64,000 bases of DNA, from contig NC_047023.1 in the NCBI RefSeq assembly GCF_902652985.1, positions 16,058,001 to 16,122,000 of the forward strand. Reading direction: 5' to 3'. Shown one piece after another: positions 4,000 to 63,624 of this stretch. The number at the start of each line of letters is the position of its first letter. Positions within the stretch are counted from its first letter, which is position 1. Made by a program: the position numbers and the translations under genes. Below the pieces are notes generated by a model, which saw only the letters and a list, made by a program, of their open reading frames with translations, made no database searches and was not told where the DNA came from. Source of the DNA: Pecten maximus (lineage: Eukaryota).

Positions 4000-4234
4000 A
4001 GTTTTTATCACTGTTTATTAACATAACTCACTGGACACAGGTCACTAGAAGTAGGGAAACGTCAGGATCCTCACTGGTCATTTACCGTCATAACTACGAT
4101 TTTTTTGTCATTTTTACGAATCGCAATTGACAAACATTTCCTAATTTTCTAGTGCAACTGGTATAAATATGGAGGGGAATCGTCCCCGAATCATTCTCAA
4201 TCTTTACTCCTCAGCGAATCATACCAACGTGAAG
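4000..4234 (+). promoter_or_regulatory. Gene 1 promoter and non-coding exon 1 (DR1 4032-4044, TATA 4162-4169, Inr TCATTC with +1 ~4193, exon 1 ~4193-4234)
   Basis: TATAAATA lies 31 nt upstream of an Inr-like TCATTC and is followed by donor AAG|GTGAGT at 4235. It is homologous to the promoter/exon 1 of genes 2-7. Confidence 0.8.
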
Positions 4235-4792
4235 GTGAGTTTTGTTTGCCGTGTTAACATATATACAGTTCTATTGTCTTGTAGTCAGATCTTATGAGTA
4301 TTTACCGTCTGACTATATATCTCTTAGCACTTCAACAGGCTCGATTATTTTTTAATCTCTGAATGTCTATTTCGCTAAAATTGATGTAAAACCCGAGACT
4401 ATGTTAACGTAATTCAGACACTTGGTTTTGGTAAACATCACTGTTTAACAACATATCATGTTTTCGTTATTGTATTTGTTTTAAAGTAGTAACAAGCTCC
4501 CGATACGTTGTTTCTTTTTGCTCGGTATATTTCATGTTCCTGTGAATATTTAATGTCGTATGTAGATCCTATTATCAACAAAATGATTTTCATCAATACA
4601 TTTTCAATTTGTTTATTTTTTATGTATCACTTGTACAAAAATATCAGTAAATAATATACATTTTTGATTAATTATTGATTAAAATCAGTTTCTAGTTAAA
4701 CTGGTGTAATCCTGGAAATAGTTATGTGTTCATTACAGTGTATTGTTTGGTGGTCATATCCTTACAGCAGATATCTCGGGAATCAGTATCTA

Positions 4793-5254
4793 AGGGAACA
4801 ACCAACGAATTGAAAAAATAGACTTTTGAAACACCCCCTGTGTATAGGGGGAAAGTTGAGCCAGGGATAAATGTCTGGCAGCCACTGATTGGCCAGTATA
4901 TTATGAAGTTACACAATAGATATGTAGCCTGATATGTAACTTTCCATAGGAAATGTTGATATGAATTTCGTAAGTCCGATTGAATTGTTTTGTTTTTTTT
5001 CAAAAATTCAGGTCATATTAATTAACAGGTAAACATTTCAGATTTTTGAGAATTTTTACTGCGAAATTCACCCATTTTCAAAATGGCTACCCTGGACAAA
5101 GTTTCAGCTAAAGACCCAACTGTTTTTGTGTCATATGAGACCCCAAACTTTTGTTATGAACCATAATTGCCAAATTGAATTCAAGAATTTTAATCATATA
5201 CTCCAAAACTTTCACACCAAATTCTATTGAAAAACAATTGGTTGGTTGGTCTCT
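4793..5254. mobile_element. ~460-bp MITE with terminal inverted repeats (Kolobok-like termini) in gene 1 intron 1
   Basis: Imperfect TIRs AGGGAACAACCAACGAATTG ... CAATTGGTTGGTTGGTCTCT. A second, inverted copy lies at 54050-54508. Confidence 0.8.
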
Positions 5255-5456
5255 GTAAACGTCATTGTGATGAAAACAAGAAACCAGATATTTATTAAAT
5301 TAAAGTGTTTTATCCTATTTCGACAAAACTTCAGTACTAAACTGTCACCATGTTTTAACTGCAAATTTATTTCATATTATGCTCCAGGTCCAGGAATTAC
5401 AAAATATCATTTTTGCTGTTATTTGTGTATGTTACAGTCCCTACCGACCCGACACC

Positions 5457-6180
5457 ATGATGAAGGTATTGTTTCTCCTGTCCTGCCTCGTGGCTTGTGG
5501 GCTCTGCCATTACTATGGTGAGTATTCATGTAGTCAGGTCACACTACAAAAGCGGCACCTGTTATTTCCTGTAGCTGATAATCTGTTACATCATTTGATT
5601 TCTATTTTTTTACTTTGTAAAGAATATATAAAAAAAAAAACTACGAGACAATTATTCATGTTCATTGATCTTTATATAAAATCCAGTAAATATGTAGATA
5701 AGTAAGCGGATGACTACTAAAAGTATCTTTTTCCTATCATCTTTATACATTACGTCTCCAGCTTACCACGTGTTTTGTTTGTGTATCATTGTTAGTTAGA
5801 TTTACTAAACAATAAACCATTTATGGCAGGAAATTCCTTTGGTAATGGTTTTGGGAATGGATTTGGGTCATCACGATTTGACGATGGATATGGACAAGAT
5901 CTTGGATTTTCTGGTTCGGGATGGATTTGGATCTGGATTTGGATCTGGAGTTGGATCTGGATTTGGATCTGGAGTTGGATCTGGATTTGGATCTGGATTT
6001 GGTTCCGGATTTGGATCCGGATTTGGATCCGGTTTTGGATCTGGATTTGGATCTGGATCCGGATTTGGAAATTTCTACGGCCGAGGAGGAAACGGACAAG
6101 GAGGAAACGGACAAGGAAGCTTTGGACGTGGATACGGAAACAGGGGGATGAGGAGAAGTCCTGTAATTGGTGGATATTAA
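5457..6180 (+). pseudogene. Gene 1: secreted Gly/Ser/Phe-rich paralog, join(5457..5517,5830..6180), with an apparent frameshift at ~5921 (pseudogene, null allele or sequence error)
   Basis: Exon 2 encodes MMKVLFLLSCLVACGLCHYYG with donor G|GTGAGT, and the acceptor is CAG|G at 5829/5830. The frame reads GNSFGNGFG...GFSGSG, but the family C-terminus (GFGSG...GRGYGNRGMRRSPVIGGY*) is in another frame. The CDS length of 412 is not a multiple of 3. 3'UTR intron 6198-6580; AATAAA 6643-6648. Confidence 0.75.
5922..6069 (+). repeat. 12-bp coding tandem repeat (GGATCTGGATTT)n encoding (GSGF)n
   Basis: Visible periodicity ggatttggatctggatttggatctggagttgg... Confidence 0.9.
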
Positions 6181-8365
6181 GACAGCAGAAATTCAAGGTG
6201 AAGGCAAAAAATAGTCCTTTGTTCTTTTGATCTTATTACTGTTTTTCTTGTTCGATACCTTTTTTGAACTTGTTACCGGCTTTCATCGTTCATTTCATAT
6301 TGTTGTTGGTTTTCCTGACTTGTTTTGGTAATGAGTATAATATAATACATAAAGGGATAATCATTACCATCAGTACATAGTCCACATTTAAAAAACACAA
6401 ATATATAGCTGTGAAAAGGAAATAGTAAAATCAGCAATGATCTTTCTGTTAGTTTAGTAATTGAAATAATATTATGTCGAACAAATTTTTAATAAGAAAA
6501 AATGTAAATGTTTATCTACAGGTATGTAGATTGATGTTAAGCTTAGCAATTGATTAAAAATATTCCCTCTTTCTTTACAGATTTATCTCATCCAGCATCA
6601 TAGATCATCTTATTTATTGCGTCATTATAATATTTCCCACTTAATAAATTGTGTTTCTAAACAGAAATATGTTGTTATTTTTATTAAAATCGCGAAAGGT
6701 TCAGGGAACTTCTAAAATCATAATCACCGCAAAGGTATATTTTTCTGACAGTAATATATTCCAAAGATGAATATCAATATTTGAAACCGCAAACCTTCTG
6801 ATGATGATGGGAAACACCTCATTACACATATTATAGATTGAATAAGGAGAAATAAATGTTATAAATTGTTTTTGTTTTTAAAAGACGTTATTTCTTAATT
6901 TTGTCCATGTAAGAAATAAATATGATTTTTGGTTTGTATTGTTTAACGTCCGATCAACAGATATGGCTGTGCAACTGGCCCCTCGTGACTTCTGATTCAG
7001 AAACGAAAACGGAACTGAAATGAAAAACATTTTCCTTGCTTCACTAATCAGTATGTTGCTTGGGTCAATATGGTCTTAATAGTACAATCAAGGAAGCTAT
7101 CGTTACCATTTGATATAAAATTGTGATAGATTTTAGCGTTTTGGAAACGACGTTCTTTATTTAAACGAAACCCAATTTGGATTAATCTAATTCTACAAAT
7201 ATGTTAGGCGCACTGTAATCTCCTGAACGAATTGTATTTCAATTAAAATCAGTATTCTTAATCATATCTATATAAATCAATATTCATATCATCCTTTATT
7301 AATATCTGGTAACCATAGATAAAAGTTACTTCGTGTTGTCAAATGCCATATCTTACTCTAGGATAATGGAGAAAATACGAAATAGTATTGCCAGTATTAT
7401 CGTACAAAAAGGAAAGTTTCCGTGGAAATCGTGACATATGTCTGTTATTTATCCAAATTATTTTTGATGGACATTGTGTTGTTTTTGATCTCCGCGTATA
7501 TTCTGATGGCGCTAATTGACATACTTATATTCGTTTTGTCGGAAACATATTTTATCATTTATTCTGAGTGATGCCTATATAATAAAGTCGTTTAATGGTC
7601 CCGATATGGTATAGCACTATACACAAGTACTCCGTGTGCTTTTAGAAATACCAAACACAAACATTACAAAATTGATTGGTGGTGTTAATGTACTTCTCCT
7701 TCCATACTTTAAAACTGGTCAGCATTCCTGAAATAAACAAAAATGGAAAACTGATAGACTTATCCATTTCTACTTTCTCTGACTTTATATGACGATCTTT
7801 TGTTCAGCTTGACCAGAACAAATACTGAATAACCTAATCGTAGACCTGTGAAAAAGCTTTATTTGGCACATTGACGACGCATACCCAAAACGAAGCGTAT
7901 GTCCTTAGGTATCAAGTAGGCATCGAAATCTTCTCTCGTTCTCAAAACTCCATAATTGTATTCTGTTTTTGTGCGGTATCTTTATTCTATCGTCAGAACA
8001 TATTTTTCCCTGCATTATGGGATCCGGGATTAGATAAGAAAACCTCATTTACAAAGTTGTTAGCCGGTCGAAATAGATGGAGGAAGGATTTTAATAGATA
8101 TCTAAGTTTAATAGATTTTCTGGAAATCAGCGTGAAATGGAATTAGATTAGGGAATAGACAACCTAAGTTAGCACTTTGCTCAATTCCATATCGAAATTT
8201 TCGGTTGCTGCAGTGACCATCTTAAACTGGTTATGACCATTTTGAGTTTCCTGGCTCCCCTTCCAATAGCCAATAGCATCATTGACGAAGCCTAGAAGGA
8301 CGAGACAGCCAGTTGGACCACAATGTGTTCATCGACGTCGTGGTGAGCGCTGTTCTGAAGCTTGC

Positions 8366-8728: not shown

Positions 8729-8933
8729 TATTCATTCAAAATGTGTGATAAACATTTACCTGGGTTACAACAACTATGCTTACACCAAACGAAGCGTCAG
8801 AATACCGACAATATGTTCGGTTTTTATTCACATTTTAGACGGGATAAACATTCAGAAATTAAATTCTCATATAAATTGCCTAAGAGAGAGTGTAAATATA
8901 TACTTCAAACGCACCGCAAAGACAGGTACTTAC

Positions 8934-9870
8934 CTAGAAGTCTGTACGATTCGGTGTCGAGTAAAGAATGGTTCGGAGATGGTTCTCCTCCATATTTATA
9001 TTTGTGTAAGCCTGGATCGTGTTCAGAGACTGAAGCTTGTTTGTTGCAAAAAGATGACTCGCAAATTAAAGACAACAAAAATTATATTGTTGTTCAAAGG
9101 TCATTTATTGAATGACTGATGAACTCTTGCGAGACCACAATATATCATAATTCAACATGAATAATGTTTGATGTAATGGAAAAAACAGAGTGTATTTACA
9201 GAATATAATGATGTAGCAACAAAGATGGGGTACAAATGATGGCGCCGATGATGAGTAATAGATACATGCAATGGACTGTACATACAGTACATGCATGTAC
9301 ATCAATGTTCATCATCACCCCATCCAAAGCTCTGAACATGTACATGTAACTTAATAATATATAGCTATAGTGTGCCCAATACACAATGCTATCATAGAGT
9401 GGACAGGCACATCGGTATCCTGGCCCCACATATGAAATGAAGGCATTGACATTCTGAACCACATATCTGTAATAATACAATTAACAAATTGATAATGCAA
9501 TAGATAACCAATCTGTAAGGAAATGCAATTTTGAGCAGGCAGATTCTGACCCGAAATACATAAATAGGTTAGAATTAATGATGAACAGATCGATAAGGAC
9601 AATACGTACTCATAGTTACATGTGATATAATATATATATAATTGTTAAATGAACGCTTGACCTCACCTTCGAAGAATTGAGTGCTATCAACATATTTTCA
9701 GCTTGTTATCATACTTTCAAGTATGTCAATTACGATTCGTAAAAATGACAAAAAATCGTAGTTATGACGGCAAATGACCAGTGACGATCGTGACGTATAC
9801 GTACTTCCAGTGACCTGTGTCCAGTGAGTTATATTAGTAAACAGTGATCAAAACTGCCCGGGGCTGAACT
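8934..9870 (-). pseudogene. Orphan promoter plus exon 1 of the Gly-rich gene family; no coding exons found
   Basis: Minus-strand TATAAATA at 8993-9000, exon 1 ~8969-8934 and donor AG|GTAAGT. A proximal module with DR1 (TGACCTGTGTCCA, 9811-9823) at ~9730-9870 is the reverse complement of 4000-4130, but it is displaced ~700 bp from the TATA. Confidence 0.75.
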
Positions 9871-12730: not shown

Positions 12731-15313
12731 ACTAATAATGATACCGCAGGTCAAGTATTTAGAATTCCGGAAGGGAAGTCAGGAAAATCAAAATGGCTGC
12801 TACGAAAAACAAAAGTTATTGTTTTGACGGGAAAGTCCATCAATACTGTTTGCATATGTATTGAATTTTATTTTAAATTTTTAAAGTGGTTTTGTGTAAT
12901 GTCATTATTTACGGAAGCGGTGAGGGGATATGTATTGCTTAAGCATTACTTAGAATGAATGTTGAAATACATTTTCATTCGATAAGAGTATTATCATATC
13001 TCTGTCAATTATCACCAAATGCATGACTAAGTCATCCCACAAATTTCGGTACATAATTGAGAACTGATGAGGATGCAATATTTTCTACGCCTCTCAAGCT
13101 CAATAGAAAAGTCTATAACATGTATAATGCGGTTTATTCTACTTGTGTTGTATTTCTCCGCCAAAAAAAGGATAACTCATTATTATTGAAAGGTGCAAAT
13201 ACCTTGTAAGTGAAGGTGGTAGGAACTACTGGTGGACCTTAGTCCCCGAGGTCAGCCTTAGATTGGAGGCCACGTATCAATTCATTTGAACAGTGGCATG
13301 CAATGATGAAACACCTTTATAATACAACCTTACTATATCCATCTCTCAATATTTATAGAAAGGTGTTAATATTTGCGCATTTTGAACATTTTTTAATGAA
13401 ATTAGATTACAATTACAATAAGATTTCTATGAATGACATCGATTTAGATAAAAACAGTACATCTTTATATTTGCATATTTGAATTACCTCCTAGAAAAAG
13501 TGTTGTACCAAGCTAACATCAGCGTGTAAAATAGATATTCTACATATGTAATTTTAATATCAAACGACCATAGCTTGTTCTTCTTGAAATTAGTTGAAAT
13601 TACCAATACTAATTATGATATTATTTCCTGAATTAAATTTACATGATCATATTAAATGTGATTGAATTTCTTTCAACAGGAAGAGCAAAATAAAGAAACC
13701 ATTAAAATTATAATGATATAGTAACTTAAATTCAAAAGACAATCTATTCATTTTGTTTTAATCAACTTTATTGCTTTTTGAAGGATCAAACGGTTCTTAG
13801 TCTTGATATTTGGCATGTAGTGTTTTTGATCAGAGAAAATGGTTTTATTCATCATGAATGAGATCTTGTTTGGTATTTCATATACTGTTGATGACATAAT
13901 TCAACAAGTGGAACCGTTACTGATGGTCCAGGAAAGATTTTCAGGGGCTAAATTTTCTGCATCCGTTTTTGTTGTGGTTTAAAGTATTTCTTTGTTTTCA
14001 TTTTAATTCCTCTTCGTGTCGTTTCAAATTATCCTCCTAATTAACACACTTAATCTCATAACAGATATTGTGGATTCAGGTTTAGATGTGGGTTTTTTTT
14101 TCAACTGAAATTGTTGTATGCAAATCGCACTCAGGTGCATTTGTAAGTTTACCATGCTAACACAAAACACGTCGATGAATACTTGGATCAGGAAAATCCA
14201 TTTGGGCGAACACTATCTCTGTATGTTCATAGGGCGAGAACACAGGTAAATAATACATTATACAATCATCATACGTACGGCTTGAATTATCTTGTTTCGA
14301 AGATTTGAGGGAGATTATTATTTCCATTATGAGTTGAAGAAAAAACGCATTTTCACAAATACTAAAGCTCTCTGCCATAATCGTATATATGATTTTTTTT
14401 ATTTATCTATTTATACACACAATTCACTACCGGGATCTTTTCACAAGGTCTCCGTCACAGAAGCTATTCTTTGTACATAGCTTGATCCCTAATTGTCTTT
14501 ATATGGACTTTATAATACTTCTGAATATTTCAAAAATGGCTTTAGCGTTTCAAGTGAACATACGAAATTTCCAATTTACATATGTGGATTAATGGCAATC
14601 AATCATATTTCAACCTTTTGACATTACTTAATATCAAAATATCTGCTTAAAATTGGACATTGCAATGAAATACATTCTCAACTTCCACGTTAGAGAAAGT
14701 CTATACGTCATACTAATTGTTCGTTCATTACCTTTAGACTATAATTAACCCTGTCTCTTCTCTTAGACAGCTAGACGAGTGTTTGCATTAGTATATAGAT
14801 AAAAAAAAACATTCCGTTTAACAAAAACATTTTATTACATGAAAACAATCATTTTTGGCAATAAATTAAATGGCAAGTTATGCTGAGTATGATGAATCTG
14901 AAAACGAAAAAGGGGAAAAAATTAAAATAACTTTCAAGGCTATTATCTAACATGTTTACCAGTGACACGTGTATTTTTTCAGCTAGTTGTTCAACATAAA
15001 GTGCACATGTGGATCAAGGATTTGTTTTCCCTTTAACGGCTACAATATATAGATAAGAACTGAGACAATTTAAAGCGTGCGGTTAATGCTCCTCCTTTTT
15101 TATCATCATTATTCGGCATTTACTGCAATGATTACTACTGTGTATGATAATAATTCACCTTTAGTGGTGCTGTTAACTTGTTTTTCCTTTTTATAGGCCT
15201 ATGTTTAGTACTGAATGATAAACTTTTTTGATTTTGTAAATTAGGAGTATCTGCTACCATATGAATTCGGGCAATGAGCAATGACTTCGTGCTTTACCTT
15301 GAAATTCTATTGT

Positions 15314-16269
15314 TTAATATCCACCAAATACGGAGCCTCGTCGTCTCATCCACCTGTTTCCGTAACCACGTCCATAGCCTCCAAGACCGTATCCCCCACG
15401 ACCATAGTTATTTCCGTATCCGTTTCCATATCCATATCCACCACCAAGAAGTCCAAGACCACTTCCGAATCCATCGTCTAACATTGATCCCAAGCCATAG
15501 CCATAGGAATTTCCTGCAATAGATGTTTTCGTTATGTAAAGCTATATATGCAAACAACAACAATGTCACAAAATTATAAAAATAATTTTGACTTGAAAAT
15601 GATTACCAATAGATTCATTGAAGCGAACATATCTTGAAAATAAACGGTCATGAAAATAGATTTACATTAGCTATTTGGTCAGTCAGTTTCATTTAAGGAC
15701 GTGTGAGGTTTGGGGGTTTGGAGGTTTGGGAAACCGGGAGTACCTGGAGAAAAAACATCGATCTACCGTCAATACCAGACAACTGCCCGTGTGTTTCGAA
15801 CTCGCGACCGAGAGGTGAAGGGCTTGTGATAAAGTGTCGGGGCACCTTAACAAACGCCGCCGCGATCCCTAACTTTAACCAAGTCGTAAGGCTTATTTAT
15901 AATATGCGGAGGTCATCATATATAAGTAACGTAAACTGGGTTGTTTTTGCATCTTAAAATATGAAAAATTAGCCGGTTTGTAAACAAGGAAGGAAAACCT
16001 TTCAAATATAATGTAAGCAGCGTTTTATTTTCTAGAGTCTAGGATATCAGAATAAAATTAGGACAAATGAAATTGTCATCTTGTTTTCTAGAGATTACTG
16101 AATATTTCTATATTTTTACTACTGGTTATGTTAAACGTAAGTGGTGTAGTGTGTACCATGTGATTATATGTTGATGTGTAAACATCCACCGCATCTAGTA
16201 CTCACCATAATAATGAGTGCAGAGCCCACTAGCCACGAGGCAGGACAGGAGAAACAATACCTTCAGCAT
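15314..16269 (-). CDS. Gene 2: secreted Gly/Tyr-rich protein, 87 aa, complement(join(15314..15513,16206..16269))
   Basis: Protein: MLKVLFLLSCLVASGLCTHYYG|NSYGYGLGSMLDDGFGSGLGLLGGGYGYGNGYGNNYGRGGYGLGGYGRGYGNRWMRRRGSVFGGY*. Phase-1 GT-AG intron. Exon 1 ~17245-17204; 3' exon from 14897; AATAAA 14836-14831. Confidence 0.92.
15680..15869 (-). mobile_element. tRNA-derived V-SINE-like element in gene 2 intron 2
   Basis: On the minus strand there is a B-box-like GAGTTCGAAAC followed by a V-domain-like TTTTCTCCAGGTACTCCCGGTTTCC. It is absent from the same intron in genes 3-6. Confidence 0.65.
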
Positions 16270-17203
16270 AGTGTCGGTTTGGTAGTGACTGAAAAACACC
16301 AAAGTTTTATCATTAAATAATACTCTGAATGATTAATTAATACTTGATTTTATCTCGCTATTACAGACGTCTGGTTCGGTTAATTAACAGGTAATACTCC
16401 TAAATAATGCATATGTCAACTTATTGATGTATCGGTATCAAAACAGATTATCAGTTAGCGATTGAGATCAACTTCAGAATGACTAAAAATATTCCATAAA
16501 CTAGTAAAAGAACGAATATGGAACGATAAATAAACGTTTAACAACAGTTTAACACTATATATATCTTTCAGATACATATCTTAGTAAAACGAAAAGACAG
16601 AATGAGAATACCAATATGTAAACAGAATCATTATCCTAAAACAATAGAGAATACCGCCTTATCAACCAAAATTCTAACATGAAATTGATAAAACGAGGGC
16701 AATATATCAACAAAAGATCTCGATTTGTATGCAGACTCTTGAAAAAGAACAAGAAGTTTAAGATCGCTGTTCCCGAACAACAGAACAAGCAGACAAATCA
16801 ACGAGCATCGAATCAGTTTAACTGACATCGATCAATGAAACAACATACTGTCGTACACTGATAGTGTGAAGTGCGGTTGTAATGTTGTAACAGCATGATG
16901 AAAATACATGAAAGATAGTGTCACATTTCTATCAATTGCTAGAATTTCAATTGGTAATTTTTTCGTTGTGACAGTATGGATTTATAACAACAATGCTCGA
17001 ACGAAATATAGCATCAGGATAACGAAAGAGAAACTTCTGTTTTAACAGCAATACATATTAAAAGAAATATAGCGTAAACATTTCAATAGATAATTATGTC
17101 TTCAGTCGTAAAAATAATGATACAACTAAATATAACGACAAAATTCAGATGACAATAGAAATATACATATTGTACTCATAAACACACTCCAACAGGTACT
17201 TAC

Positions 17204-17460
17204 CTAGACGTCGGTACGATTCGGTGTCGAGTAAAGATTGAGAATGGTTCGGGGATGGTTCTCCCCCATATTTATACAAGTTGCACAAGGAAATCAGGAA
17301 ATGTTTCTCAAATGCGATTCGATAAAACGACAAAAGCTCACAATAATGTTGACGAATGACCGGTGACGATTATGACTCATCCATACTACTTGTGACCTGT
17401 GTCCAATAAGGTGTATTAGTAAGATCAACAGTGATCAACCTGGGGCTATCTAGGCTACTA
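17204..17460 (-). promoter_or_regulatory. Gene 2 exon 1/promoter: TATA 17269-17276, tandem AGGAAAT, AP-1 TGACTCA 17373-17379, DR1 17393-17405
   Basis: The module is conserved upstream of genes 2-7, with TATA ~31 nt from an Inr-like CCATTC. Confidence 0.8.
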
Positions 17461-26598: not shown

Positions 26599-26900
26599 GG
26601 TGTAGACTTGGTAGTGACTGAAAGACAAAAATGTCATTATATAATAACAAATGTAAAATATCTTATTTATTCTACAACAAGCCGTATCTCTGTTCAATTA
26701 CAGCGTCATTCCATGACTCTTATCTAATTAAAACACAAAAGCACAAACATATTTAGAGCTAACGGAGGCGAAGAAATAACTTAGTGGATAGCAATACGCT
26801 ATAATCATAAACGGATATACAAGTAAAAGCATAAATAGAAAACATAACAAAGCAAAGCAAAGAGTCGTATGCTGATAATGTATAGTTCGGTTACAATGTA

Positions 26901-40058: not shown

Positions 40059-40790
40059 TTAATATCCACCAAATACGGAACCCCGTCGTTTCATCCACCT
40101 GTTTCCGTATCCGCGTCCGTAGCCTCCAAGTCCGTATCCCCCGCGACCATAGTAATTTCCGTATCCGTTTCCATATCCATATCCACCACCAAGAAGTCCA
40201 AGACCACTTCCGAATCCATCGTCTAACATTGATCCCAAGCCATAGCCGTAGGAATTCCCTGCAATAAATGTTTTCTGTTTGTAAAGCTGAATATGCAAAC
40301 AACAAAAATGTCACACTTAACAACCTTGGAAATAAGGTTGACTCGAAACTTTTAAGCAATAGACACCCAGCAGGGAACATATCTCTACATAAACGGTCTT
40401 GAAAATAAGCCATTAGGTGTAACCAGGTTGTAGGGCTGTTTTGTGATAAACAGAGGTCGGCATCATATACAAGCCGCGTAAATTATGTTTTTGCATCTTA
40501 AAAATGTGAAAAGGTCAGCCGGTTTCTCACATAAGCCATTTATTTTCTACAGATTATGGGATACGAATAAAATACATACACACATAATTGTCACTTTGTT
40601 TCCTAGTGAATATTGAATAGTTTTTACCCAAAATTATAAAAAAAAAATGACTGCTGGTTATGTTATGTATAAGTTGTGTAGTGTATAATATGTGAATGTA
40701 ATTGATGCGTGAACATCCACTGCACTCACCATAATAAGTGCAGAGCCCACTAGCCACGAGGCAGGACAGGAGAAACAATACCTTCAGCAT
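40059..40790 (-). CDS. Gene 5: secreted Gly/Tyr-rich protein, 86 aa, complement(join(40059..40258,40730..40790))
   Basis: Intact ORF with the variant RWMKRR. Exon 1 ~41360-41319; TATA 41384-41391; 3' exon from 39474; AATAAA 39412-39407. Confidence 0.93.
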
Positions 40791-47223: not shown

Positions 47224-47258
<35 letters not shown>

Positions 47259-49823: not shown

Positions 49824-51180
49824 ATCGGTTAAAAGCATTATACATGTTACTCGCAACTCTCCACAATCATTCTTCACAAGGAATCCGTCGCAGTAATCAT
49901 TATATGTATCTTCTGATAATTAACTTCATATGTAATTAGGTATTAAATTTATCACAATTCGCAATGACAGTAAAAAAAGACATTTGTTCCCTTATAAGTT
50001 AATAGTAATGTAAAGTTGTATACAAATTGCACTTTAGAACAAAAATTTGTCATTTTAGGACATCTAATAACATAGCAAGGAAGTTCATTGATAAAGTTCT
50101 CGTTTTAAATATTGATACTACTTTATTTCTGTAACATCAAGAAGTAGTCAATATCATAACACTTCATGAACAAGCTTGTAACGTCGTGGGGTCAAAAAAC
50201 CAATCAAGTGAAAATACTTTTCAAACGTTGGCGTCATTTTAAAATGTACAACTGGTATGAGGAAACAATCAGTTTGTGCGATCATGCTATGATATCTCAA
50301 CCATTTGAGATTAGTTTAAATCATAATTTGAATCTGGTAACGATAATCAAAACACAGAGTCAAGTCTACGCGGCAGGGAGGGGTCTGTGTGTCATACTAA
50401 TTATCCAGCACTTAACGAATATCACCTCTAGAATTTTTCTGGTAGAAACATTTTCTTCTGTGCATTATTTTGACTATTCTGACTTTATATACAAATAAAA
50501 ACCATATTTCATTTATTAAAAACATTTTATTAAGTGAACACAATTTTTGGCAATAAATTAAATGGTTAAAGCATGAAGGAGAGTGTGATGAATCTGCAAA
50601 AAAAAAGAAACACATTTAATACAATTGTCAATGATATCATCTATAATATCTATAATTACCAATATATGTTTCTATCAGTTACTGTCTGTCCATATTTCTG
50701 ACTACGGGCAATTTTTTCTTTCGTGGTTATATTTAACACTATATAGATAAGAACTGACAAAACTCAATTGATAAGCAATACGGTTGATGCTCCTAACTTT
50801 CGAACTTTTAACATTTTCAGTGCAATTTGTCTTAAAATAATGCAATTTTATCATCATTATGAAGCATTTACTGCATTGATTATTATTTTATGTGAAAAAT
50901 ATTAAATTTCTATTTGATGATGCTTGATTGGTCTATTTTAAAAGCTTAGATTTACCACTTAATGACAACTTCTTTGTGTAAATTAGGAGAATATGTTACA
51001 ATGTCAAATTAGGTAATAAACAGACAATGCCTTCGAGCTTTACCTAGAAATATTTTATTTGCTGATTTACATACTCATTTGATTCTGAGTTATCTATACT
51101 CATTACTCCATACCAAACATATCGACAACAAGGTCAAAAAAGCAAATCTAAAACACTTCGAACTTTACCTGGAAAACGTT

Positions 51181-51886
51181 TTAATATCCACCAAATACGG
51201 AACTCCGTCGTCTCATCCACCTGTTTCCGTATCCGCGTCCGTGGCCTCCAAGTCCGTACCCCCCGCGACCATAGTAATTTCCGTATCCGTTTCCATATCC
51301 ATATCCACCACCAAGAAGTCCAAGACCACTTCCGAATCCATTGTCTAACATTGATCCCAACCCATAGCCGTAGGAATTCCCTGCAATAAATGTTTTCTGT
51401 TTGTAAAGCTGAATATGCAAACAACAAAAATGTCACACTTAACAACCTTGGAAATAAGGTTGACTCGAAACTTTTAAGCAATAGACACCCAGCAGGGAAT
51501 ATATCTCATCAAGTGTAACCAGGTTGTAGGGCTGTTTTGTGATAAACAGAGGTCGGCATCATATACAAGCCTCGTAAATTATGTATTTGCATCTTAAAAA
51601 TGTGAAAAGGTCAGTCGGTTCCTCACATAAGCCATTATTTTCTACAGATTATGGGATACGAATAAAATGCATACACACATAATTGTCACTTTGTTTCCTA
51701 GTGAATATTGAATGGTTTTTACCCAAAATTATCAAAAAAAAATGACTGCTGGTTATGTTATGTATAAGTTGTGTAGTGTATAATATGTGAATGTATGTTG
51801 ATGCGTGAACATCCACTGCACTCACCATAATAAGTACAGAGCCCGCTAGCGACGAGGCAGGACAGGAGAAACAATACCTTCAGCAT
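51181..51886 (-). CDS. Gene 6: secreted Gly/Tyr-rich protein, 86 aa, complement(join(51181..51380,51826..51886))
   Basis: Intact ORF with variants LDNG, GGHG and RRRSS. Exon 1 ~52462-52421; TATA 52486-52493; 3' exon from 50593; AATAAA 50531-50526. Confidence 0.93.
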
Positions 51887-54049
51887 GGTGTAGACTTGGT
51901 AGTGACTGAAAGACAAAAATGTTATTATATAATAACAAAATGTAAAATATCTTATTTTGTCTACAACAAGCCGTATCTCTATTCAATTACAGCGTCATTC
52001 CATGACTCTTATCTAATTAAAACACAAAAGCACAAAAACATTTAGAGCTAACGGAGGCGAAGAAATAACTTAATACACTATCAATACGCTATAATCATCA
52101 ACGGATATACAAGTAAAAGCATATATAGGAAACACAACAAAGAGAAGCAAAGAGTCGTATGCTGATAATGTATAGTTCGGTTACAATGTAAAAACAGTAA
52201 GATGAAAATACTAGACAATATGAACTGATAACAGCAATGATCAAACGAAATATATCGTCAGAATGCGGATAGATTAACTCCAATTGGAACAGAATGCCTA
52301 TTAAACTAAATATAGAGTCGAAATTCGATATGGTTAAACGAAATATGAGGACAAAATTCAAATGCCATTAATAAATAACAGAAAGATATATTCGCTAACA
52401 TACTATAAACAATGACTTACCTAGACGTCGGTACGATTCGGTGTCCAGTAAATATTGAGAATGGTTCGGGGATGGTTCTCCTCCATATTTATACAAGTTG
52501 CACAAGGAAATCAGGAAATGTTTCTCAAATGCGATTCGATAAAACGACAAAAGCTCGCAATAATGTTGACGAATGACCGGTGACGATTATGACGCATCCA
52601 TACTACCTGTGACCTGTGTCCGGTGTATTAGTAAGAACCAGTTATCAACCTGGGGCCATTTAGGCAACTACGCAACTGTCATGGAGATGTGAATGAAATA
52701 CGTACATGCAAATGCAACTTATATTTGGAAACCAATCATAGACGAGTGTTGATATGACATAAATGTATGTACTATTTAAAAATGATAATAACAGAGAATA
52801 CATTATTGTTATCGAACCAATGGGTCTGGCTCAACTAATAGGATGAAATACATACAGGCAGGAAATAGAACGTCCTCAATGGATCCAATTAATTACTAAT
52901 AATAGTGTTGGTATATATTACGTCGCTAGTTTCACAGTGTCAACATTGTTTTAAGTTTTAAGCTCCACAATTCACTATTTCATGAATTCCCAAAAGCAAC
53001 CAAGCATTTACATAAATAAAATGATAGTACAGACCCTGTATGTTTGATACACAAGTTTAATAATTATAATTGATGCATTGCAAAATCACTAATTCTCAAA
53101 ATTCATCTAAATATGACATTCTCATCCAAAACAAATATATACCTGTATGTAGAGTATTACAGAAAGTGTACCAAAATTAGTCTACAAGCTAATTTATAAG
53201 TCCATTTGAGATGTAATAAAGATAACAAAAAACAAAGAAATCTCAAAACCTAAGTTCAGATTCTTAGCATTGCCTGATTTCCATAGTCACTGGACAATGC
53301 ATGTGTCTAAACGTCCAATATGTGGTCTAACTATATACCGAATGGTTAAAGTGGAACATTCACGTTTTGAGAAATGGATCAAAACAAAAAAACTTTAAAC
53401 TTTAAAATGACGATGCAGTCGCCACCGGAAAAGTACCACCATAGTGTCGCTCAAGCGTCTCAAACGTATCAGAAAGGATTTTTCATCAAAGCTGACAAAA
53501 ACGAAGACAAAATTTAACTTCAGCGATACCTGGTAAAATTATCAGCATATTAAGACTAGATGTTCCAAAAATAATAGTTAAATAAATACGATAATTAATT
53601 ATGCTTACCATACTGAACAGGTTCTACCCAAAGACAAAGACACGATATAATTACACTTTCATAATAATAAATTTTCCATTTCTGGATAATAACACCCCTG
53701 CTTTCCTTACCTATGGTGTTTATACCCCCAGTATGTCCCAAATGCCATATTACCTTGTTGGTATGCCTAGTGGTCCCCTTATCACCATCAAAGTAATCAT
53801 GTTAAGAATGTGACTGAACCCATATTTGACCCAGATTTTTATTGCCGGATGCCTTCAAGGATGTAAAAAACCATTTCAAATCTTTATTGGTCTCCATGAA
53901 CATTTGTATTTTGTTCATATTTGTCCAGCTTCATCGCCATCTGAGTGTATGTATACACTAGTGTGTCCTATGTTACTAACACCGAATTCAGTTTGCAGGC
54001 GTGATTTTTTTACTTAGATTAACAGAACGGTCATTGTTCACCTTATTCA

Positions 54050-54903: not shown

Positions 54904-55009
54904 AGTCGCCTCCTACATTATGTATCATTTCAAACGTGTCCTAGAAGGACCAAATAATTATATGAGGCAGTTTAATTCATTTTGGCTCTACATGGGGGTT
55001 TTTTCAGGT

Positions 55010-55312: not shown

Positions 55313-58020
55313 TTTTTCGCTCATACATGTGTTACTGTATCTAACTCTGAATCTTAATTGAAAGTTAATCTGATACCTTGTATGTATTTTGTACAATACT
55401 TGGAGATTGCAAGTGGTAGGCAACGCTGGTTGACTTTAGATTATAGCAGCCTCAATGCAACGTTTTTAGTCATGACACGGTCCATAACACTTTGACTTGG
55501 CGTTCTTTTATAGTTCAATATGGAATTTATGTAGAATTGGACTATTTCCCTTCTCCACCTAGATTTTGATATTTCTTTCGACTCATGTTACGTTCCTCTG
55601 TCGCCTCTTAGGTATAGAAACATAAAGCCCTTAGCATCACTGACGAGTTATAGAAGGACGAAATAATTGTATTTTGATTTTGGCTCTACTGAGATTGTAT
55701 TAAAAAGTGTGCTATCTAATGTGTCTTTAGTACAATCCTTTGTACACACTATGATCATACACATGGTGATGATGGTAATGCTTTCATGCCTTAGGATAAA
55801 AAACGGGTGTTATGATACAACTGCGTGCCATTTCAGTCAAAGATTGATACATGTATATGAAATATCTTCTTAGCAGTATCCCAGACTATTAAATCATGGC
55901 AAACAATACTACCCGATAGAAAGCGAATTATTTTATACACATACTTTCACATATCCCTTAAATATTATTTCATTTCACATTCATTCATTTTATAAGCAAA
56001 CCAATGTTCTATCATTGGATAACATAAGATCTATAAAATGCATGTTCGTTCGATGATATTTCCTCAAAACAGATTTTGAATATAAACGACATTCTATGAC
56101 AAAAATGATATTAATTCTCAATTAAGTACTAATACTACAATGACACATTTCTGGGGATATCAGATGAGGTCTATGCCATATTCCCGCTTCTATGTTAAAT
56201 CTATGAGACCAATTAAGTCAATTGGAAAAGGTATACAACATCTGGCTCCTGGTGACTCTAAAAGTATCTTCTATAAACATTTTCCATAATCTTTATTGAA
56301 ATACTAATATAAATGCATCAATAGTTTCACTAGTTTAACCCAATTTATGATAAGAGTGTACAACTCATTATCAACAAGTACATTATTTTAGTTACGTATT
56401 TTAGCCAGTATTTAGTGATATTGTAGCTAGTTAATTTAGATTAGTATGTGATACTTGTCCGTGTATAACAAGTTGCAATTAGTTCATCAGCTAATCATGC
56501 GATACAGCAACACATTATGGAGACTGACCTGAGATAACATGATATAATAACATTTTATGGAGACTAGCTGACGATTCATGGAATCCATTAACGTGTATTA
56601 TATGTACTTTATATTTTATTCATATTTTCATATTATCTAAATAACAATACATTTTAGGTGCAAACAAATACCAAAGTAAAATGACGTAAATTATTATGAT
56701 CAGTTCACTCTCAGGAACCTTAAATGTTAGAATTGTGAAGATTAACAGTTACCTACCTGACTGGGTCGGAAACGTTAATAGTGCTATATGTTTACATGGC
56801 CCTTAATGTCTCATAAACATTATTAGTGACGCCGGTTCAGAACACATCTGTATTTGATGTAATATGGTCGCGTTGTGAGATTGGTACGTTTCTTCGTTTT
56901 ATTTCGTCGTTCGATCGACCTGTGATGGGTTGGTATATTTACACATAGGTCGCGTGACATTTGTATGGTATGAACTTGCTCATATGGCATCCACATTTTC
57001 TGGAGTTATAGTCAATTACCTTGAAAATTGTCGGTATCTTTTAGGATCGTGTGATTGATTTGATCTCAAGTGTAATATGTATGGTGCTATGTTGAAAACT
57101 ATATACAGTATATTATTATCTGATTATTTAATTTATTAATTTGATACATCATTTTCAGCTCTATCGTGGCTGTCAAATTTACTGATGGAAGAAACCATAT
57201 AATTTTATGGGGAAAGTACTGACACGTGACATGTATCTATAAATACATATAATTCCGTTTTAAAGCGAGGACACCTGTAAGCTCTTAATAATTTGCCTGA
57301 AATTGTCAGACTAGTTGCGGTCACTCAAACTTGTCAACAGATGTGCTAATATCGTAAAAGGACAATAACTCGTAAAACTTGATATGATAAACCCTTTAAG
57401 ATATGTACATGTATACCATGTGTATATTGCGCGTTAGAACAAATATATGTCATTTAAGGACATTGAATGACATAGCAAGGAAGTTCATTAGTGAAGTTTC
57501 CTATGAAATATTAAGGATATTTCTGTAACAAGTATGACGTAGTTCATATTGTAACACTACAAGAACAAGCATCTAACGCATGTTGGTCATTTTGACTATT
57601 CTACTCATTTATATACAATAGAAAAACCACATTCCATTTAACAAACACATTTTATTAAGTGAAAATAATTTTTGGCAATAAATTAAATGGTAAAGCATGA
57701 AGGAGAGTGTGATGAATCTGCAAAGAAAAAAAGAAACATTTAATACAATTGTCGATGTTATCATCTATCATATATTATAATCATCAATATATATACATTG
57801 TAAATATATATCAGTTACTTTTCGTCCATATTGCTGACTACGGGCAATCTTTCCTTTCATAGTTATAGCTAACAATATATCAGTGAGAACTGATGAAAAT
57901 TATTTATCAAATAACATAATTTATCAAAAACATAATTTTAACAAAATAACAAACATTTGTTCACGTCAAGAAAGGGATATCTAAAACAAAACTTCGAACT
58001 TTACCTGGAAATTCTATTGT

Positions 58021-58675
58021 TTAATATCCACCAAATACGGAACCCCGTCGTCTCATCCACCTGTTTCCGTATCCACGTCCGTAGCCTCCACGTCCGTAGC
58101 CTCCAAGTCCGTATCCCCCGCGACCATAGTAATTTCCGTATCCGTTTCCATATCCATATCCACCACCAAGAAGTCCAAGACCACTTCCGAATCCATTGTC
58201 TAACCCTGATCCCAAACCATAGCCGTAGGAATTTCCTATAATTCATTTTGAAGAAAATGTAAATAAAGCAATCAAAATACCAAAACAAAAATCTTTCAAA
58301 TAATCCATCTCGAATTAAGCAACGGTGTCCTTATAATAGAATTACCATGTAAACAATCTGTCTGGAAATCTTAAACTGGTTTCGAAAATAAGTCGAGAAA
58401 TCTTTTTTCTAAAAGACATATGAAAGCCGCGACGTATTTTTAGAATTGTGCTTAAAGGATAAAATGAGGACACACATAATTGCTATGATTTTTTCAATCT
58501 TCACAATTTTAAGTTTTCTCTTAATAAAACAGATTATGACTGCTGGTTTTGCTATACTTAAGTGGTTTGGTGTGCACCGCGTAAATATACTTGGTATATG
58601 TATCCAATACTCACCGTAGTAATGGCAGAGCCCATTAGCCACCAGGCAGGACAGGAGAAACAATACCTTCAGCAT
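58021..58675 (-). CDS. Gene 7: secreted Gly/Tyr-rich protein, 91 aa, complement(join(58021..58235,58615..58675))
   Basis: Protein: MLKVLFLLSCLVANGLCHYYG|NSYGYGLGSGLDNGFG...GGYGRGGYGRGYGNRWMRRRGSVFGGY*, TAG acceptor. Exon 1 ~59701-59660; TATA 59725-59732; 3' exon from 57717; AATAAA 57656-57651. Confidence 0.92.
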
Positions 58676-61600
58676 GGTGTCGGTTCGGTGAGGACTGAAA
58701 CATAGCAAAATTGTATCGTAAAATAATATGTTGTACGCCTTCGAACAAAACATACTCAATATACATTATGAAATTGTATTTTCGATATTTAATGATGTTT
58801 CGTTTTTAGCGATTTAAATTAGATTGGTACTGAAGTCGAGTTTTGTATTAATATGACAAAGCGTACCGATGTTTATCATAGTCGTTTTACACCAATACTA
58901 ATCATTGTCCCACAGACTGTTAATAAATATCTTATACAAGTATTTCATGTGATATAACATTTAATCAAAATGTTTTTGAATACGCTTGCATTAAAAAAAA
59001 GATACCGACATGTGATTCTAACTCAAAATCAATTAAACGTAGGCAAAATAGGAACAAAATATATATATTTCCATGGAGACGACTGAAGATGCACGGAGTC
59101 GGTAAGACCATGTGTTTAAGAAGGGTAAGCGTGGTGAACGCGACACCACCAAACACGTGAACAAGCATGGAATCCTTCTAACTTCATATTGATCAATGAA
59201 ATATAACATATCCCATTGAAAGCAGGATGCCTGTCATAAAAAAATAGCTCTAATTGAATAAAAGTTTAGCACTAAATATTGTTTAAAGCTAATGGAGATA
59301 AAGGATAACGCAGTGGAAAAAATTACCCCCTATGACCATCAAAGGATATGCAAGTAAAGCATAAACAGGGGGTATAAGACAGTCAACAAAAACAAAGATA
59401 CAATTTCTATAGCGTGGTGAACTTCAGATAACACAGTATAATGTTATAGCAATGCTAACCCAAAATATAATGTCAGAATTTAAATAAAATAAAGTTTGGC
59501 TGTTACAGATGATAATTTGACACCAATGCTAACTGAAATATAGTGTCAGAATTTCGGTAGATATAACTTCGGTTGTGATGCTTACGGAAAATGTAAGTAA
59601 CTTAAATTCCCATGATAATGGAAATAGTATATTGACAGATTACAAACACAGGTACTTACCTTGAAGTCGGTACGATTCGGTGTCGAGTAAAGATTGAGAA
59701 TGGTTAGGGGATGGTTCTCCTCCATATTTATACATATTTCACAAGGAAATCAGGAAATATTTCTCAAATGCGATTCGATAAAACGACAAAAACTCGCAAT
59801 AATGTTGACGAATGACCGGTGACGATTATGACTCATCCATACTACTTGTGACCTGTGTCCAATAAGGTGTATTAGTAAGATCAACAGTGATCAACCTGGG
59901 GCTATTTAGGCTACTACGCAACTGCCATGGGTATATGAATGAAGTGCGTACATGTTAACGTAACTCATGTTTTTAAATAAGCATAGAAGAGTTTTGAAAA
60001 CAAATATGTACTATTAAAGTCAACATTTTAACCTTGAATATTACGCGAGAAATGATTTTAATGATGTAAATAGAAAATTGTTGTTGGTAAAATTTGGAGC
60101 AAAAACAATTGTCAAAATCTCCCTTTATTACAATTATAACAGTGAAATCAAAACAATGCAAGGTATTTCTAGATTGATGTATTCACATTGAGAGTAAATT
60201 CCTTGAAAAGAATACAATTTATTCACGTGAATATCGTAGATTCTATGACTAAATAGATAGAACTGTTACAATATAGATGTTTCATCATAATAGACCTCAT
60301 ATCACTGTCGCCCTAAAACTACTAAAGCCCAATAAGGAAATCAAGAAAGGATGTTTTAATAATCGTAATCGGTCTAAAAAATAAAACATAGGTGAGAATG
60401 ATTCATTGAAATTGGCAAAATGAGGACAGCATCTAAAAATATATCTGAAACCGATACCAGTGTTCATAATTAACCAAACATTGTATACATTTGAAGACTT
60501 TAGCGGACAAACATAGGAGGCGAAAAAGGACTTTTAACGAAAACGAGGCGGACGAAATGTGAGCACGAAAACAATTTACAAGGTGACAAAAGTACCAGAA
60601 GAAACGGACCAGGATAAATATCATACATGTATAATTGGTTAAACCTAATTAGCGTCAATTAACAGGTTCATGGGCAGTGACTGGATATAATTCAAATTTT
60701 CGCAGTTTTGCCAAAACAAAATAAAGAAAGAATAAATGGAGATATCGTTTTATATCGTTTTTTTCCGTAAAAAAATATTAATAAGATTTGTAAGGAAGAT
60801 ATCTTCAGAGTATCTTTCGTGATTTTCTCGAAAATTGAATTACATGCAAAAGACATTTTACCATAAGGATGATTATAACAACTGTCAATTTGATATCTGA
60901 TCGCATCGCCGACACATCAGCGTGTATGTTTAGACTAGCAATTGTTTGTTTTACTTTTATAGTTCCGTTGTCACTACCCCAGTGGTCTGTTTGAGGACGT
61001 GATATTATCTGAATTACTTAGATCAACTGGATGCCCATTATTCGCCTTTTGCGTGAAGAAACGTGAAGATATATATATTGTTCGTTTTATCCATTTTGAG
61101 TTCGTATCAATCACGGTATTAATGCATATCAGTATTCTGTTGTTGTGTTTAGACGAATTTTGAAAAAAAAACTCCATGTTTCTTCATATACATAATTGTC
61201 ATAATGTGAGGGGATCGAAATTCTTCAGGTTTAGCACCATATTCCTTAGAGTAAAGAAGACATCTATGATTTCGGTCTTTTGTGTAATTGTCAGATTACA
61301 AGTAAATGACTGTGCACGTTCGTTAATCTGACATTATGGAGACTTGCCCTCGCCTTTTTTACATGATTCATGCGATCCTTGGAAGTTAATGATATATATT
61401 TCAATAGTACTCATGTTTTTATTCATGTTAACACATTGTATATTCTAAAACTGACAGAATCATCATGACGTGTTATCAGAAAGGTTAAACAGCTAATTAA
61501 TTGCTTTGGATGACAAGCGTTACCAGCCCTATAATCTTACCTTATCCCTTCATAGCGCATGTGTATCATATGTATCAGAATATACATAATTAATTTGATG

Positions 61601-63559: not shown

Positions 63560-63624
63560 GTGATATCACTAAATGGGAATATACTAATCTGTGTAAATTC
63601 AGAAACAGCCCTCTATAGCTAGTA

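What the first reader, a model, noticed from the sequence alone, without database searches (positions are those of the whole stretch)
4162..59732. Tandem cluster of seven small secreted Gly/Tyr-rich protein genes: candidate biomaterial (shell matrix, periostracum or byssus) protein family
Seen: seven paralogs with identical 4-exon architecture and a 17-aa signal peptide. The 69-aa mature chain of gene 4 has 27 Gly, 13 Tyr, 6 Arg and no Cys or Lys. It is organised as an acidic N-part (LDDG), a hydrophobic GLGLLGG segment, YG/RGG repeats and a basic tail ending GGY. Known: shematrins, mussel mfp-3 and other quinone-tanned proteins are Gly/Tyr-rich, secreted and basic-tailed, and Tyr/Arg stickers on Gly spacers drive coacervation. 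Inference: a dosage-amplified, lineage-specific structural or adhesive family, probably DOPA-modified or phase separating. A Gly-rich antimicrobial role is an alternative. I do not recognise it as a named gene, and the ORF track fragments it.
Basis: partly seen in the sequence, partly recalled or inferred. Interest (0 to 1): 0.85.

Follow-up and report, generated by a model that had tools for sequence, protein, structure and literature searches.

The report
Scallop-specific secreted Gly/Tyr-rich gene cluster
The king scallop carries a tandem cluster of very small, secreted, disordered glycine/tyrosine-rich protein genes that are really spliced and very highly transcribed in one public study. 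They are found so far only in scallops, and they most likely build a cross-linked secreted material, but their tissue and function remain untested.

Summary
The window has seven paralogs with the same four-exon plan: a TATA box and 5'UTR exon, a signal-peptide exon, a Gly-rich exon, and a 3'UTR exon.

- **Six Gly/Tyr genes (minus strand).** Mature chains are 69-74 aa, pI 9.4-9.7, with no Cys.
- **Seventh gene (plus strand).** It belongs to a Gly/Phe/Ser-rich subtype and carries a +1 frameshift in this assembly.
- **Cluster size.** Two intact members of that subtype lie just upstream of the window, and a promoter/exon-1 relic lies inside it. The cluster therefore has nine genes plus one relic.
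- **Expression.** Contigs of two public runs from one study join all three introns at GT..AG. Exon k-mer depth is 6,000-35,000 against about 70 in introns. Two runs from two other studies show nothing on the gene.
- **Selection.** Coding exons and a 248-nt promoter block stay 93-97% identical where introns fall to 51-73%. dN/dS is 0.04-0.13 between the old copy B1 and copies B2-B5.
- **Relatives.** The only relative among billions of proteins is an Argopecten irradians protein auto-named "keratin-associated protein 19-4-like". Its locus holds a second member, and the promoter and exon 4 are also conserved there.
- **Family tests.** Pfam, the PDB, abductin and KRTAP membership all fail.

The structural, cross-linkable reading is the best but unproven (about 0.45). 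An antimicrobial role remains open.

The scan had noted a different Gly/Tyr-rich family elsewhere in this genome, not this locus.

The parts
4163..6690 (+). Gene 1 (A3), Gly/Phe/Ser-rich subtype. TATA box at 4163, exon 1 ends 4234, exon 2 is 5438-5517 (ATG 5457), exon 3 is 5830-6197, exon 4 is about 6580-6690. The conserved tail and TAA (6178-6180) lie in the Gly frame.
5914..5918 (+). One extra base in gene 1 compared with its two intact paralogs (+1 frameshift). Either a recent pseudogene or an assembly error.
8928..9000 (-). Relic TATA box plus 5'UTR exon with a GTAAGT donor. No signal-peptide or Gly-rich exon follows it.
9726..9840 (-). Upstream promoter block of the relic, separated from its TATA box by an insertion of about 700 bp.
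   Evidence: (D16)
14810..17276 (-). Gene B1 (Gly/Tyr subtype, 87 aa). TATA box at 17276, exon 1 ends 17204, exon 2 is 16288-16206, exon 3 is 15513-15298, exon 4 starts at 14897 (AATAAA at 14836).
25190..27828 (-). Gene B2 (86 aa). TATA box at 27828, exon 1 ends 27756, exon 2 is 26617-26538, exon 3 is 26062-25851, exon 4 starts at 25277.
32365..34277 (-). TATA box at 34277, exon 1 ends 34205, exon 2 is 33784-33705, exon 3 is 33239-33028, exon 4 starts at 32450.
39385..41391 (-). Gene B4 (86 aa), the model checked against RNA contigs. TATA box at 41391-41384.
41319..41362 (-). B4 exon 1 (5'UTR). The 3' end at 41319 is fixed by a spliced joint. The 5' end is estimated from the TATA box position.
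   Evidence: joint 40809/41319, GT..AG on the minus strand
40730..40809 (-). B4 exon 2: 19 nt of 5'UTR plus 61 nt that encode the signal peptide and the first three mature residues. Ends in phase 1.
40047..40258 (-). B4 exon 3: the Gly/Tyr-rich mature chain, stop codon at 40061-40059, then 12 nt of 3'UTR.
39385..39474 (-). B4 exon 4 (3'UTR). AATAAA at 39412. The 3' end is approximate.
   Evidence: (joint 39474/40047)
50505..52493 (-). Gene B5 (86 aa). TATA box at 52493, exon 1 ends 52421, exon 2 is 51905-51826, exon 3 is 51380-51169, exon 4 starts at 50593.
57630..59732 (-). Gene B6 (91 aa, with one extra GYGRG unit). TATA box at 59732, exon 1 ends 59660, exon 2 is 58694-58615, exon 3 is 58235-58005, exon 4 starts at 57717. 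Its spliced exon 2-3 junction appears among the loose ends of runs X1 and X3.

Best explanation
A scallop-specific (Pectinidae) family of very small, secreted, intrinsically disordered proteins. One subtype is Gly/Tyr/Arg-rich and the other is Gly/Phe/Ser-rich. Each protein has a conserved signal peptide, a conserved N-module (..YYGNS.G.G.GS..D.G.G), a central G-X repeat of variable length, and a conserved C-module (G.[FY]GRGYGNR.M.RR..V.GGY, then stop). The genes share a strongly conserved TATA promoter, were amplified in tandem, and are transcribed at very high level in a restricted tissue or stage. Inferred mechanism: after secretion, the regularly spaced aromatic residues (median spacing 4) and the Arg residues, held on Gly spacers, make the chains condense. 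The Tyr residues, including the invariant C-terminal Tyr, are then cross-linked by tyrosinase-type oxidation into an insoluble matrix. That matrix could be periostracum, shell framework, ligament sheath or byssus-like material. The genes, splicing, expression, selection, lineage restriction and disorder are shown here. Condensation, cross-linking and the material itself are inferred.
For: Gene models and splicing: all three introns are joined at GT..AG in contigs of runs X1 and X3. Exon depth is 6,000-35,000 against about 20-120 in introns, and junctions from B4-type and B6 transcripts are both present. Signal peptide and composition: 17-aa leader; B-type mature chains of 69-74 aa have 26-31 Gly, 12-14 Tyr, 5-7 Arg, no Cys, pI 9.4-9.7 and 21-23% aromatic residues; A-type chains of about 110 aa have 42-44 Gly, 12-15 Phe, 16-20 Ser. 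Disorder: AlphaFold2 models only the leader as a helix, and most of the mature chain (residues 25-75 and 85-87) has pLDDT below 50. Constraint: between the old copies (B1, B6) and the core copies, exon 3 is 92-96% identical while introns are 51-73%. dN/dS is 0.04-0.13 for B1 against B2-B5. The 248-nt promoter plus exon 1 is 93-97% identical in all six B genes and about 70% identical to the Argopecten promoters, with an invariant TATA box and flanking blocks. Family range: the only relative is Argopecten XP_069136852.1, whose locus holds a second member. Precedent from the literature: Gly/Tyr-rich regions of molluscan KRMPs, and a Gly/Tyr-dominated periostracal-groove transcript, are read as quinone-tanned structural proteins (PMC3191542). 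Tyrosinases are part of the P. maximus shell proteome (PMC5854119). The near-neutral GFGSG subtype (net charge +1 to +2) fits a material better than a cationic peptide.
Against: No protein-level evidence, and the tissue is unknown because the run metadata are coded. Only one study shows strong expression. Two runs laid from two other studies show nothing on the gene, and the best runs of the other studies listed hold at most 0.11 of the sampled words. If any of those are adult mantle, a general shell-matrix role is unlikely. There is no homology to any proven matrix protein. No shell-proteome match could be checked, because no supplements are held.
Confidence: 0.45

Rival explanations
1. Host-defence peptides: a bivalve class of small, cationic, Gly/Tyr-rich antimicrobial peptides made by haemocytes or epithelia. 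They would be convergent with Gly-rich AMPs of nematodes and arachnids (a comparison from my own knowledge).
For: The B-type chains are small (7.2-7.7 kDa), secreted and cationic (net +4 to +6, pI 9.4-9.7). The genes are tandemly amplified and very highly transcribed in one study only. The signal peptide is conserved across subtypes and genera while the mature chain varies. Both Argopecten promoters carry a GGAATTTCC, kappa-B-like sequence next to the TATA box.
Against: The mature chain is under strong purifying selection, not diversifying selection. The A subtype is almost neutral (net +1 to +2). There is no predicted amphipathic structure. The kappa-B-like site is only a half-site in Pecten. 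No induction data exist.
Confidence: 0.2
2. Peptide precursor: cleavage at the basic cluster (RRR, KRR or RR) releases the conserved C-terminal heptapeptide (type GSVFGGY or SPVIGGY) as a signal. The Gly-rich part would be a spacer or a second product.
For: The tail after the basic cluster is the best-conserved part outside the Gly-X repeats, across subtypes and genera. A dibasic site precedes it in 9 of the 10 copies read (8 intact Pecten genes, the tail of frameshifted gene 1, and the second Argopecten gene).
Against: Argopecten P0001 has RQR followed directly by Pro, a poor convertase site. There is no C-terminal Gly for amidation. One peptide per precursor, nine gene copies and extreme transcript depth are atypical for neuropeptides. 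The Gly-rich part is itself under purifying selection.
Confidence: 0.08
3. True homologues of the mammalian high-Gly/Tyr keratin-associated proteins, as the automatic names and PMC10029157 imply.
For: The RefSeq name of the Argopecten relative. The ESM Atlas nearest clusters are KRTAP16, KRTAP6 and KRTAP20 at score 0.79-0.80. A BLAST E-value of 2e-4 is reported for a P. maximus 'KRTAP6-2-like' protein.
Against: No match to Pfam KRTAP PF11759 even at E<=1. An Atlas score of 0.80 is reached by a third of shuffled proteins. The profile search of 1.84 billion representatives returns no vertebrate protein. These proteins have a signal peptide and four exons, whereas KRTAPs are cytoplasmic products of (to my knowledge) intronless genes. 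The similarity is compositional.
Confidence: 0.02

Closest known systems
KRMP (lysine-rich matrix proteins) and shematrins of pearl oysters (Pinctada)
   Same: Small or medium secreted mantle proteins with family-conserved signal peptides and Gly/Tyr-rich low-complexity regions, encoded by multigene families. The Gly/Tyr region is thought to be cross-linked by quinone tanning (PMC3191542). From memory, shematrins also end in a basic cluster plus a terminal Tyr.
   Different: No detectable sequence homology. There is no Lys-rich, Cys-containing basic domain: the mature chains here have 0-1 Lys and no Cys. These proteins are much shorter than shematrins. Expression site and presence in shell are unknown here.
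Periostracum precursors (Mytilus 'periostracin', from memory; Pinctada maxima EST PM241)
   Same: A Gly- and Tyr-dominated, basic, secreted protein of the kind expected for a tanned sheet (PM241).
   Different: No sequence is available to compare. Scallop periostracum is very thin. No localisation data exist for this family.
Abductin, the scallop hinge-ligament elastomer
   Same: A small secreted scallop protein with about 40-60% Gly, Phe-Gly repeats and terminal Tyr residues proposed as cross-link sites (PMC9999432). The A subtype's GFGSG repeat resembles it in style.
   Different: Abductin's defining GGFGGMGGGX repeat and high Met content are absent (1-4 Met). The abductin-type genes of this genome lie on another chromosome-scale contig (C8, 22.78-22.87 Mb) and share neither the leader nor the tail.
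Mammalian high-Gly/Tyr keratin-associated proteins (KRTAP6, 16, 19, 20)
   Same: Size (60-90 aa), Gly/Tyr composition, tandem gene clusters and a matrix-forming role. They are the source of the automatic names.
   Different: No Pfam match. KRTAPs are intracellular with no signal peptide. The gene structure differs. This is analogy, not homology.
Nematode Gly/Tyr-rich NLP and caenacin peptides and arachnid Gly-rich AMPs (from memory)
   Same: Secreted peptides of about 60-90 aa with GYG and RG motifs, encoded in tandem clusters and highly inducible.
   Different: No homology was detected. Induction and activity are untested. The conserved N- and C-modules here have no counterpart that I know of.

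Membership tests
High-Gly/Tyr keratin-associated proteins (Pfam PF11759 KRTAP) | Significant match to the family profile | tested here: not met
   hmmscan of B4 exon 3, A1 exon 3 and the Argopecten protein found no family at E<=1. The profile search of 1.84 billion representatives returned no vertebrate protein.
High-Gly/Tyr keratin-associated proteins (Pfam PF11759 KRTAP) | Cytoplasmic protein without a signal peptide (my knowledge of the family) | tested here: not met
   All copies begin with a 17-aa hydrophobic leader on its own exon, which AlphaFold2 models as a helix.
KRMP / shematrin shell-matrix families | Detectable homology to Pinctada members | tested here: not met
   Profile searches of 1.84 billion representatives and 5.8 billion clusters found only one pectinid protein.
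KRMP / shematrin shell-matrix families | Lys-rich, Cys-containing basic domain (KRMP; PMC3191542) | tested here: not met
   Mature chains have 0-1 Lys and no Cys.
KRMP / shematrin shell-matrix families | Mantle-edge expression and presence in the shell matrix | not testable with these tools
   Run names and tissues are coded. No proteome supplements are held.
Abductin | GGFGGMGGGX decapeptide repeats and high Met content (PMC9999432) | tested here: not met
   1-4 Met per chain. Genes with FGGMGGG repeats lie on contig C8 and have a different exon content.
Gly-rich antimicrobial peptides (functional class) | Small, secreted, cationic, Gly-rich | tested here: met
   The B subtype is 7.2-7.7 kDa with net charge +4 to +6. 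The A subtype is only +1 to +2.
Gly-rich antimicrobial peptides (functional class) | Antimicrobial activity or induction by infection | not testable with these tools
   No assay or annotated challenge data are available here.
Pectinid Gly/Tyr/Phe-rich secreted family (defined here) | Shared leader, N-module, C-module ending GGY-stop, four exons with the last intron 12-17 nt after the stop, and a conserved TATA promoter | tested here: met
   This holds for nine Pecten genes (gene 1 with a frameshift) and two Argopecten genes.

The most novel reading that the evidence does not exclude
The family is a new class of bivalve host-defence peptides: Gly/Tyr/Arg-rich, disordered, and convergent with nematode caenacins. 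It would be made at very high level by haemocytes or a barrier epithelium. The neutral GFGSG subtype would act as a co-secreted gel former.
Probability: 0.15. Interest if true: 0.65.

Novelty: new member of a known kind. Interest (0 to 1): 0.4.

Why it matters
If the structural reading is right, these are among the shortest natural "sticker-and-spacer" material proteins: 69 residues, Tyr/Arg on Gly, no Cys and no Lys. They come with a ready-made natural series, namely Gly/Tyr and Gly/Phe/Ser subtypes and repeat-number variants. That is useful for studies of secreted condensates and tyrosine cross-linking, and the chains are short enough to synthesise chemically.

The family also shows how automatic names ("keratin-associated protein-like") can mislead evolutionary claims.

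The promoter is very strong and highly conserved. It is a candidate driver for high-level, tissue-specific expression in scallops.

Tried and rejected
- **Protein search with B4 exon 3 alone:** 36 word-sharing candidates, none at E<=10.
- **Profile searches:** only one relative was found. Records of the window's own species seem to be withheld from those libraries, so I cannot say how RefSeq annotates these genes.
- **Pfam and PDB sequences:** nothing.
- **ESM Atlas:** only weak compositional look-alikes, at 0.76-0.80.
- **Full-text search for six family motifs:** no paper. No supplements are held for the P. maximus shell-proteome paper.
- **Abductin hypothesis for the GFGSG subtype:** rejected.
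- **KRTAP homology:** rejected.
- **Tissue of the expressing study:** cannot be decoded. I considered that it might be a mantle or a haemocyte data set but could not verify either.
- **Joined spliced protein:** Searches were run exon by exon by reference. The joined coding sequence was used only inside a script, for composition statistics.
- **Earlier scan notes by sequence or by place near the window:** blank.
Full report
**What is there.** The window is G000:C9:16058001-16122000 of the king scallop genome. The species comes from earlier scan notes and the contig position. A six-frame scan for Gly/Tyr-rich open frames finds seven copies, one on the plus strand and six on the minus strand. A scan for the signal-peptide exon finds the same seven. 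The six minus-strand genes (B1-B6) sit in tandem units 6.4-11.1 kb apart.

**Gene model.** Reading one unit in full gives this model:
- a TATAAATA box;
- a short 5'UTR exon ending in AG|GTAAGT;
- an 80-nt exon with 19 nt of leader and 61 coding nt (signal peptide plus three residues, ending in phase 1);
- an exon encoding the rest of the protein and the stop codon;
- a GT donor 12-17 nt after the stop;
- a 3'UTR exon with AATAAA.

The same sites occur in every copy.

- Gene 1 (plus strand) is a second subtype. Its central region is a run of GFGSG-type units, which the repeat finder scores as 12.3 copies of a 12-nt unit.
- Alignment with its two intact paralogs shows one extra base at about 5914-5918. 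The frame set by the splice phase then runs into a Trp/Ile-rich reading. The conserved tail and stop codon remain intact in the other frame. This is either a very recent pseudogene or an assembly error. I could not test it.
- The two intact paralogs lie just upstream of the window, at C9:16047710-16048335 (minus) and 16052908-16053583 (plus).
- A relic lies on the minus strand at 8928-9000: a TATA box and 5'UTR exon. Its upstream promoter block is displaced to 9726-9840.
- The locus therefore holds nine genes and one relic. Neither a DNA search nor a protein search of the whole genome found further copies.

**Expression.** One run search listed 24 runs. Four runs of one 2015 study hold 36-41% of the sampled words of a 1.4-kb genomic query that is about 25% exon. 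I laid two of them (X1, X3) and two runs of two other studies (X6, X10) on 36000-41600.
- X1 and X3 contain contigs that join 41319 to 40809, 40731 to 40256 and 40047 to 39474. Every skipped stretch starts GT and ends AG on the minus strand, exactly at the predicted exon borders.
- Exon k-mer depth is about 6,000-35,000, against about 20-120 in the introns.
- Loose ends carry the 3'UTR of the B1/B6 type and the exon 2-3 junction specific to B6. At least two sorts of paralog are therefore transcribed and spliced.
- X6 and X10 have nothing on the gene apart from one low-depth intronic contig and a repeat at 37.2-37.4 kb.
- The runs are Logan contigs with coded names. Depth therefore cannot rank genes, and the tissue is unknown.
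- No intronless copy turned up in the genome searches, so the joined forms are cDNA.

**Selection.**
- B2-B5 are recent duplicates: about 92-98% identical in every compared part, introns included.
- B1 and B6 are older. Their introns are only 51-73% identical to the core copies. Exon 3 is 92-96% identical, the signal-peptide exon 80-91%, and a 248-nt block of promoter plus exon 1 is 93-97% identical.
- Nei-Gojobori counts for B1 against B2-B5 give pS 0.13-0.21, pN 0.007-0.027 and a ratio of 0.04-0.13.
- This low-complexity sequence is thus under clear purifying selection. Exon-limited gene conversion could contribute.

**Relatives.**
- A profile of the eight intact exon-3 translations, searched against 1.84 billion representatives, gave one hit at E = 2.8e-6. 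It is an 87-aa Argopecten irradians protein, XP_069136852.1, auto-named "keratin-associated protein 19-4-like".
- That protein has the same leader, the same N-terminal HYY and the same tail type.
- Its 20-kb locus carries a second, uncalled member in divergent orientation.
- The Pecten promoter plus exon 1, and exon 4, align to both Argopecten genes at about 70-75%. The TATA box and several flanking blocks are invariant.
- A broader profile that included the Argopecten sequences again found only that protein among 5.8 billion clusters.
- The multiple alignment shows a real family framework: a conserved N-module, an expandable central G-X repeat and a conserved C-module ending in GGY.

**Negative tests.**
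- Pfam gives nothing, including KRTAP, at E<=1. PDB sequences give nothing.
- ESM Atlas neighbours are KRTAP clusters at 0.79-0.80, a score that shuffled proteins reach a third of the time.
- AlphaFold2 predicts only the leader helix. Most of the mature chain (residues 25-75 and 85-87) has pLDDT below 50.
- Abductin-type genes, with FGGMGGG repeats, exist in this genome but on contig C8. They share neither the leader nor the tail.
- No open paper contains any of six family motifs.
- One paper treats a P. maximus "KRTAP6-2-like" protein as a KRTAP homologue on E = 2e-4. Given, I regard that kind of match as compositional.

**Interpretation.** What is shown: a pectinid-restricted, tandemly amplified family of secreted, disordered 7-11 kDa proteins. 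They have a conserved strong promoter, very high and restricted transcription, and purifying selection.

What is inferred: they form a secreted material by aromatic/Arg-driven condensation and Tyr cross-linking. That inference rests on four points:
- the regular aromatic spacing and the RG/YG motifs;
- the invariant terminal Tyr;
- the near-neutral Gly/Phe/Ser subtype;
- the standing interpretation of molluscan Gly/Tyr-rich regions as quinone-tanned, with tyrosinases present in the P. maximus shell matrix.

I put this at about 0.45. A host-defence role is about 0.2, a peptide-precursor role about 0.08, and the rest is unknown. The restriction of strong expression to one study cuts both ways. 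It fits a specialised secretory zone or life stage, and it fits haemocytes equally well.

**Relation to earlier scan notes.** Note s1-787178 describes another family of at least 17 small Gly/Tyr-rich secreted scallop proteins with a mini-exon-encoded hydrophobic tail, on another piece of this genome. My whole-genome DNA and protein searches with the present family found only the C9 copies. The two families are therefore not detectably related, and here the stop codon lies before the last intron. Note s1-788486 reports a Gly-Met-rich cluster 27.5 Mb further along this contig. I did not examine it.

**Limits.** The joined spliced protein was not searched as a whole. Tissue, protein, modification and activity are all untested.

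Noticed in passing
window 8928-9000 and 9726-9840 (minus strand), with 8366-8668: A relic of a tenth family member: a TATA box plus 5'UTR exon, with its upstream promoter block split off by about 700 bp. It is followed by 5.6 copies of a 54-nt tandem repeat that stays open as an 18-aa repeat in one frame. No signal-peptide or Gly-rich exon follows.
   Followed up: partly
window 5830-6197 (plus strand): With the extra base in gene 1, the splice-phase frame stays open through a Trp/Ile-rich reading to the end of exon 3. The conserved tail and stop codon survive untouched in the other frame. This suggests a very recent change or an assembly error.
   Followed up: partly
G000:C9:16047710-16048335 (minus) and 16052908-16053583 (plus); loci L005, L003: Two intact Gly/Phe/Ser-subtype members lie 4-10 kb upstream of the window, in divergent orientation.
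   Followed up: yes
window 19854-20881 and 21869-22952: Two satellite arrays of a unit of about 63 nt (core CCAGTTCCGAGTTCCGTTTAAG), in opposite orientation, form a large inverted structure in the long spacer between B1 and B2.
   Followed up: no
window 47463-49694 (minus strand): A 744-aa open frame with reverse transcriptase (RVT_1, E = 2e-35) and zf-RVT domains. This non-LTR retrotransposon insertion accounts for much of the 11-kb spacing between B4 and B5.
   Followed up: partly
window 41300-41560 and paralogs; L008:8215-8500 and 20114-20395: The promoter has invariant blocks across both subtypes and both genera: GTATAAATAT, ATTTCCT about 25 nt upstream of it, two (A/T)GGTCA-type half-sites further upstream, and CATTCTC inside the 5'UTR exon. 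Both Argopecten copies read GGAATTTCC (kappa-B-like) where Pecten has only ATTTCC.
   Followed up: partly
window 2207-2738 and 63176-64000: Tandem repeats flank the cluster: a 45/90-nt unit x 9.5 at 2.2-2.7 kb, and 38-, 32- and 154-nt units at 63.2-64.0 kb.
   Followed up: no
L001, window coordinates about -15547 to -14951: A repeat region open in several frames, one of them Gly/Arg/Ser-rich (units like VVSGRRGGAVF), lies 5 kb beyond the outermost family member. It might be another low-complexity gene or a satellite.
   Followed up: no
G000:C8:22777575-22874951 (L006, L007): Abductin-type genes with FGGMGGG-type repeats (open frames of 191 and 323 aa) cluster on another contig. They are useful as the genome's true hinge-ligament elastomer locus.
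   Followed up: partly
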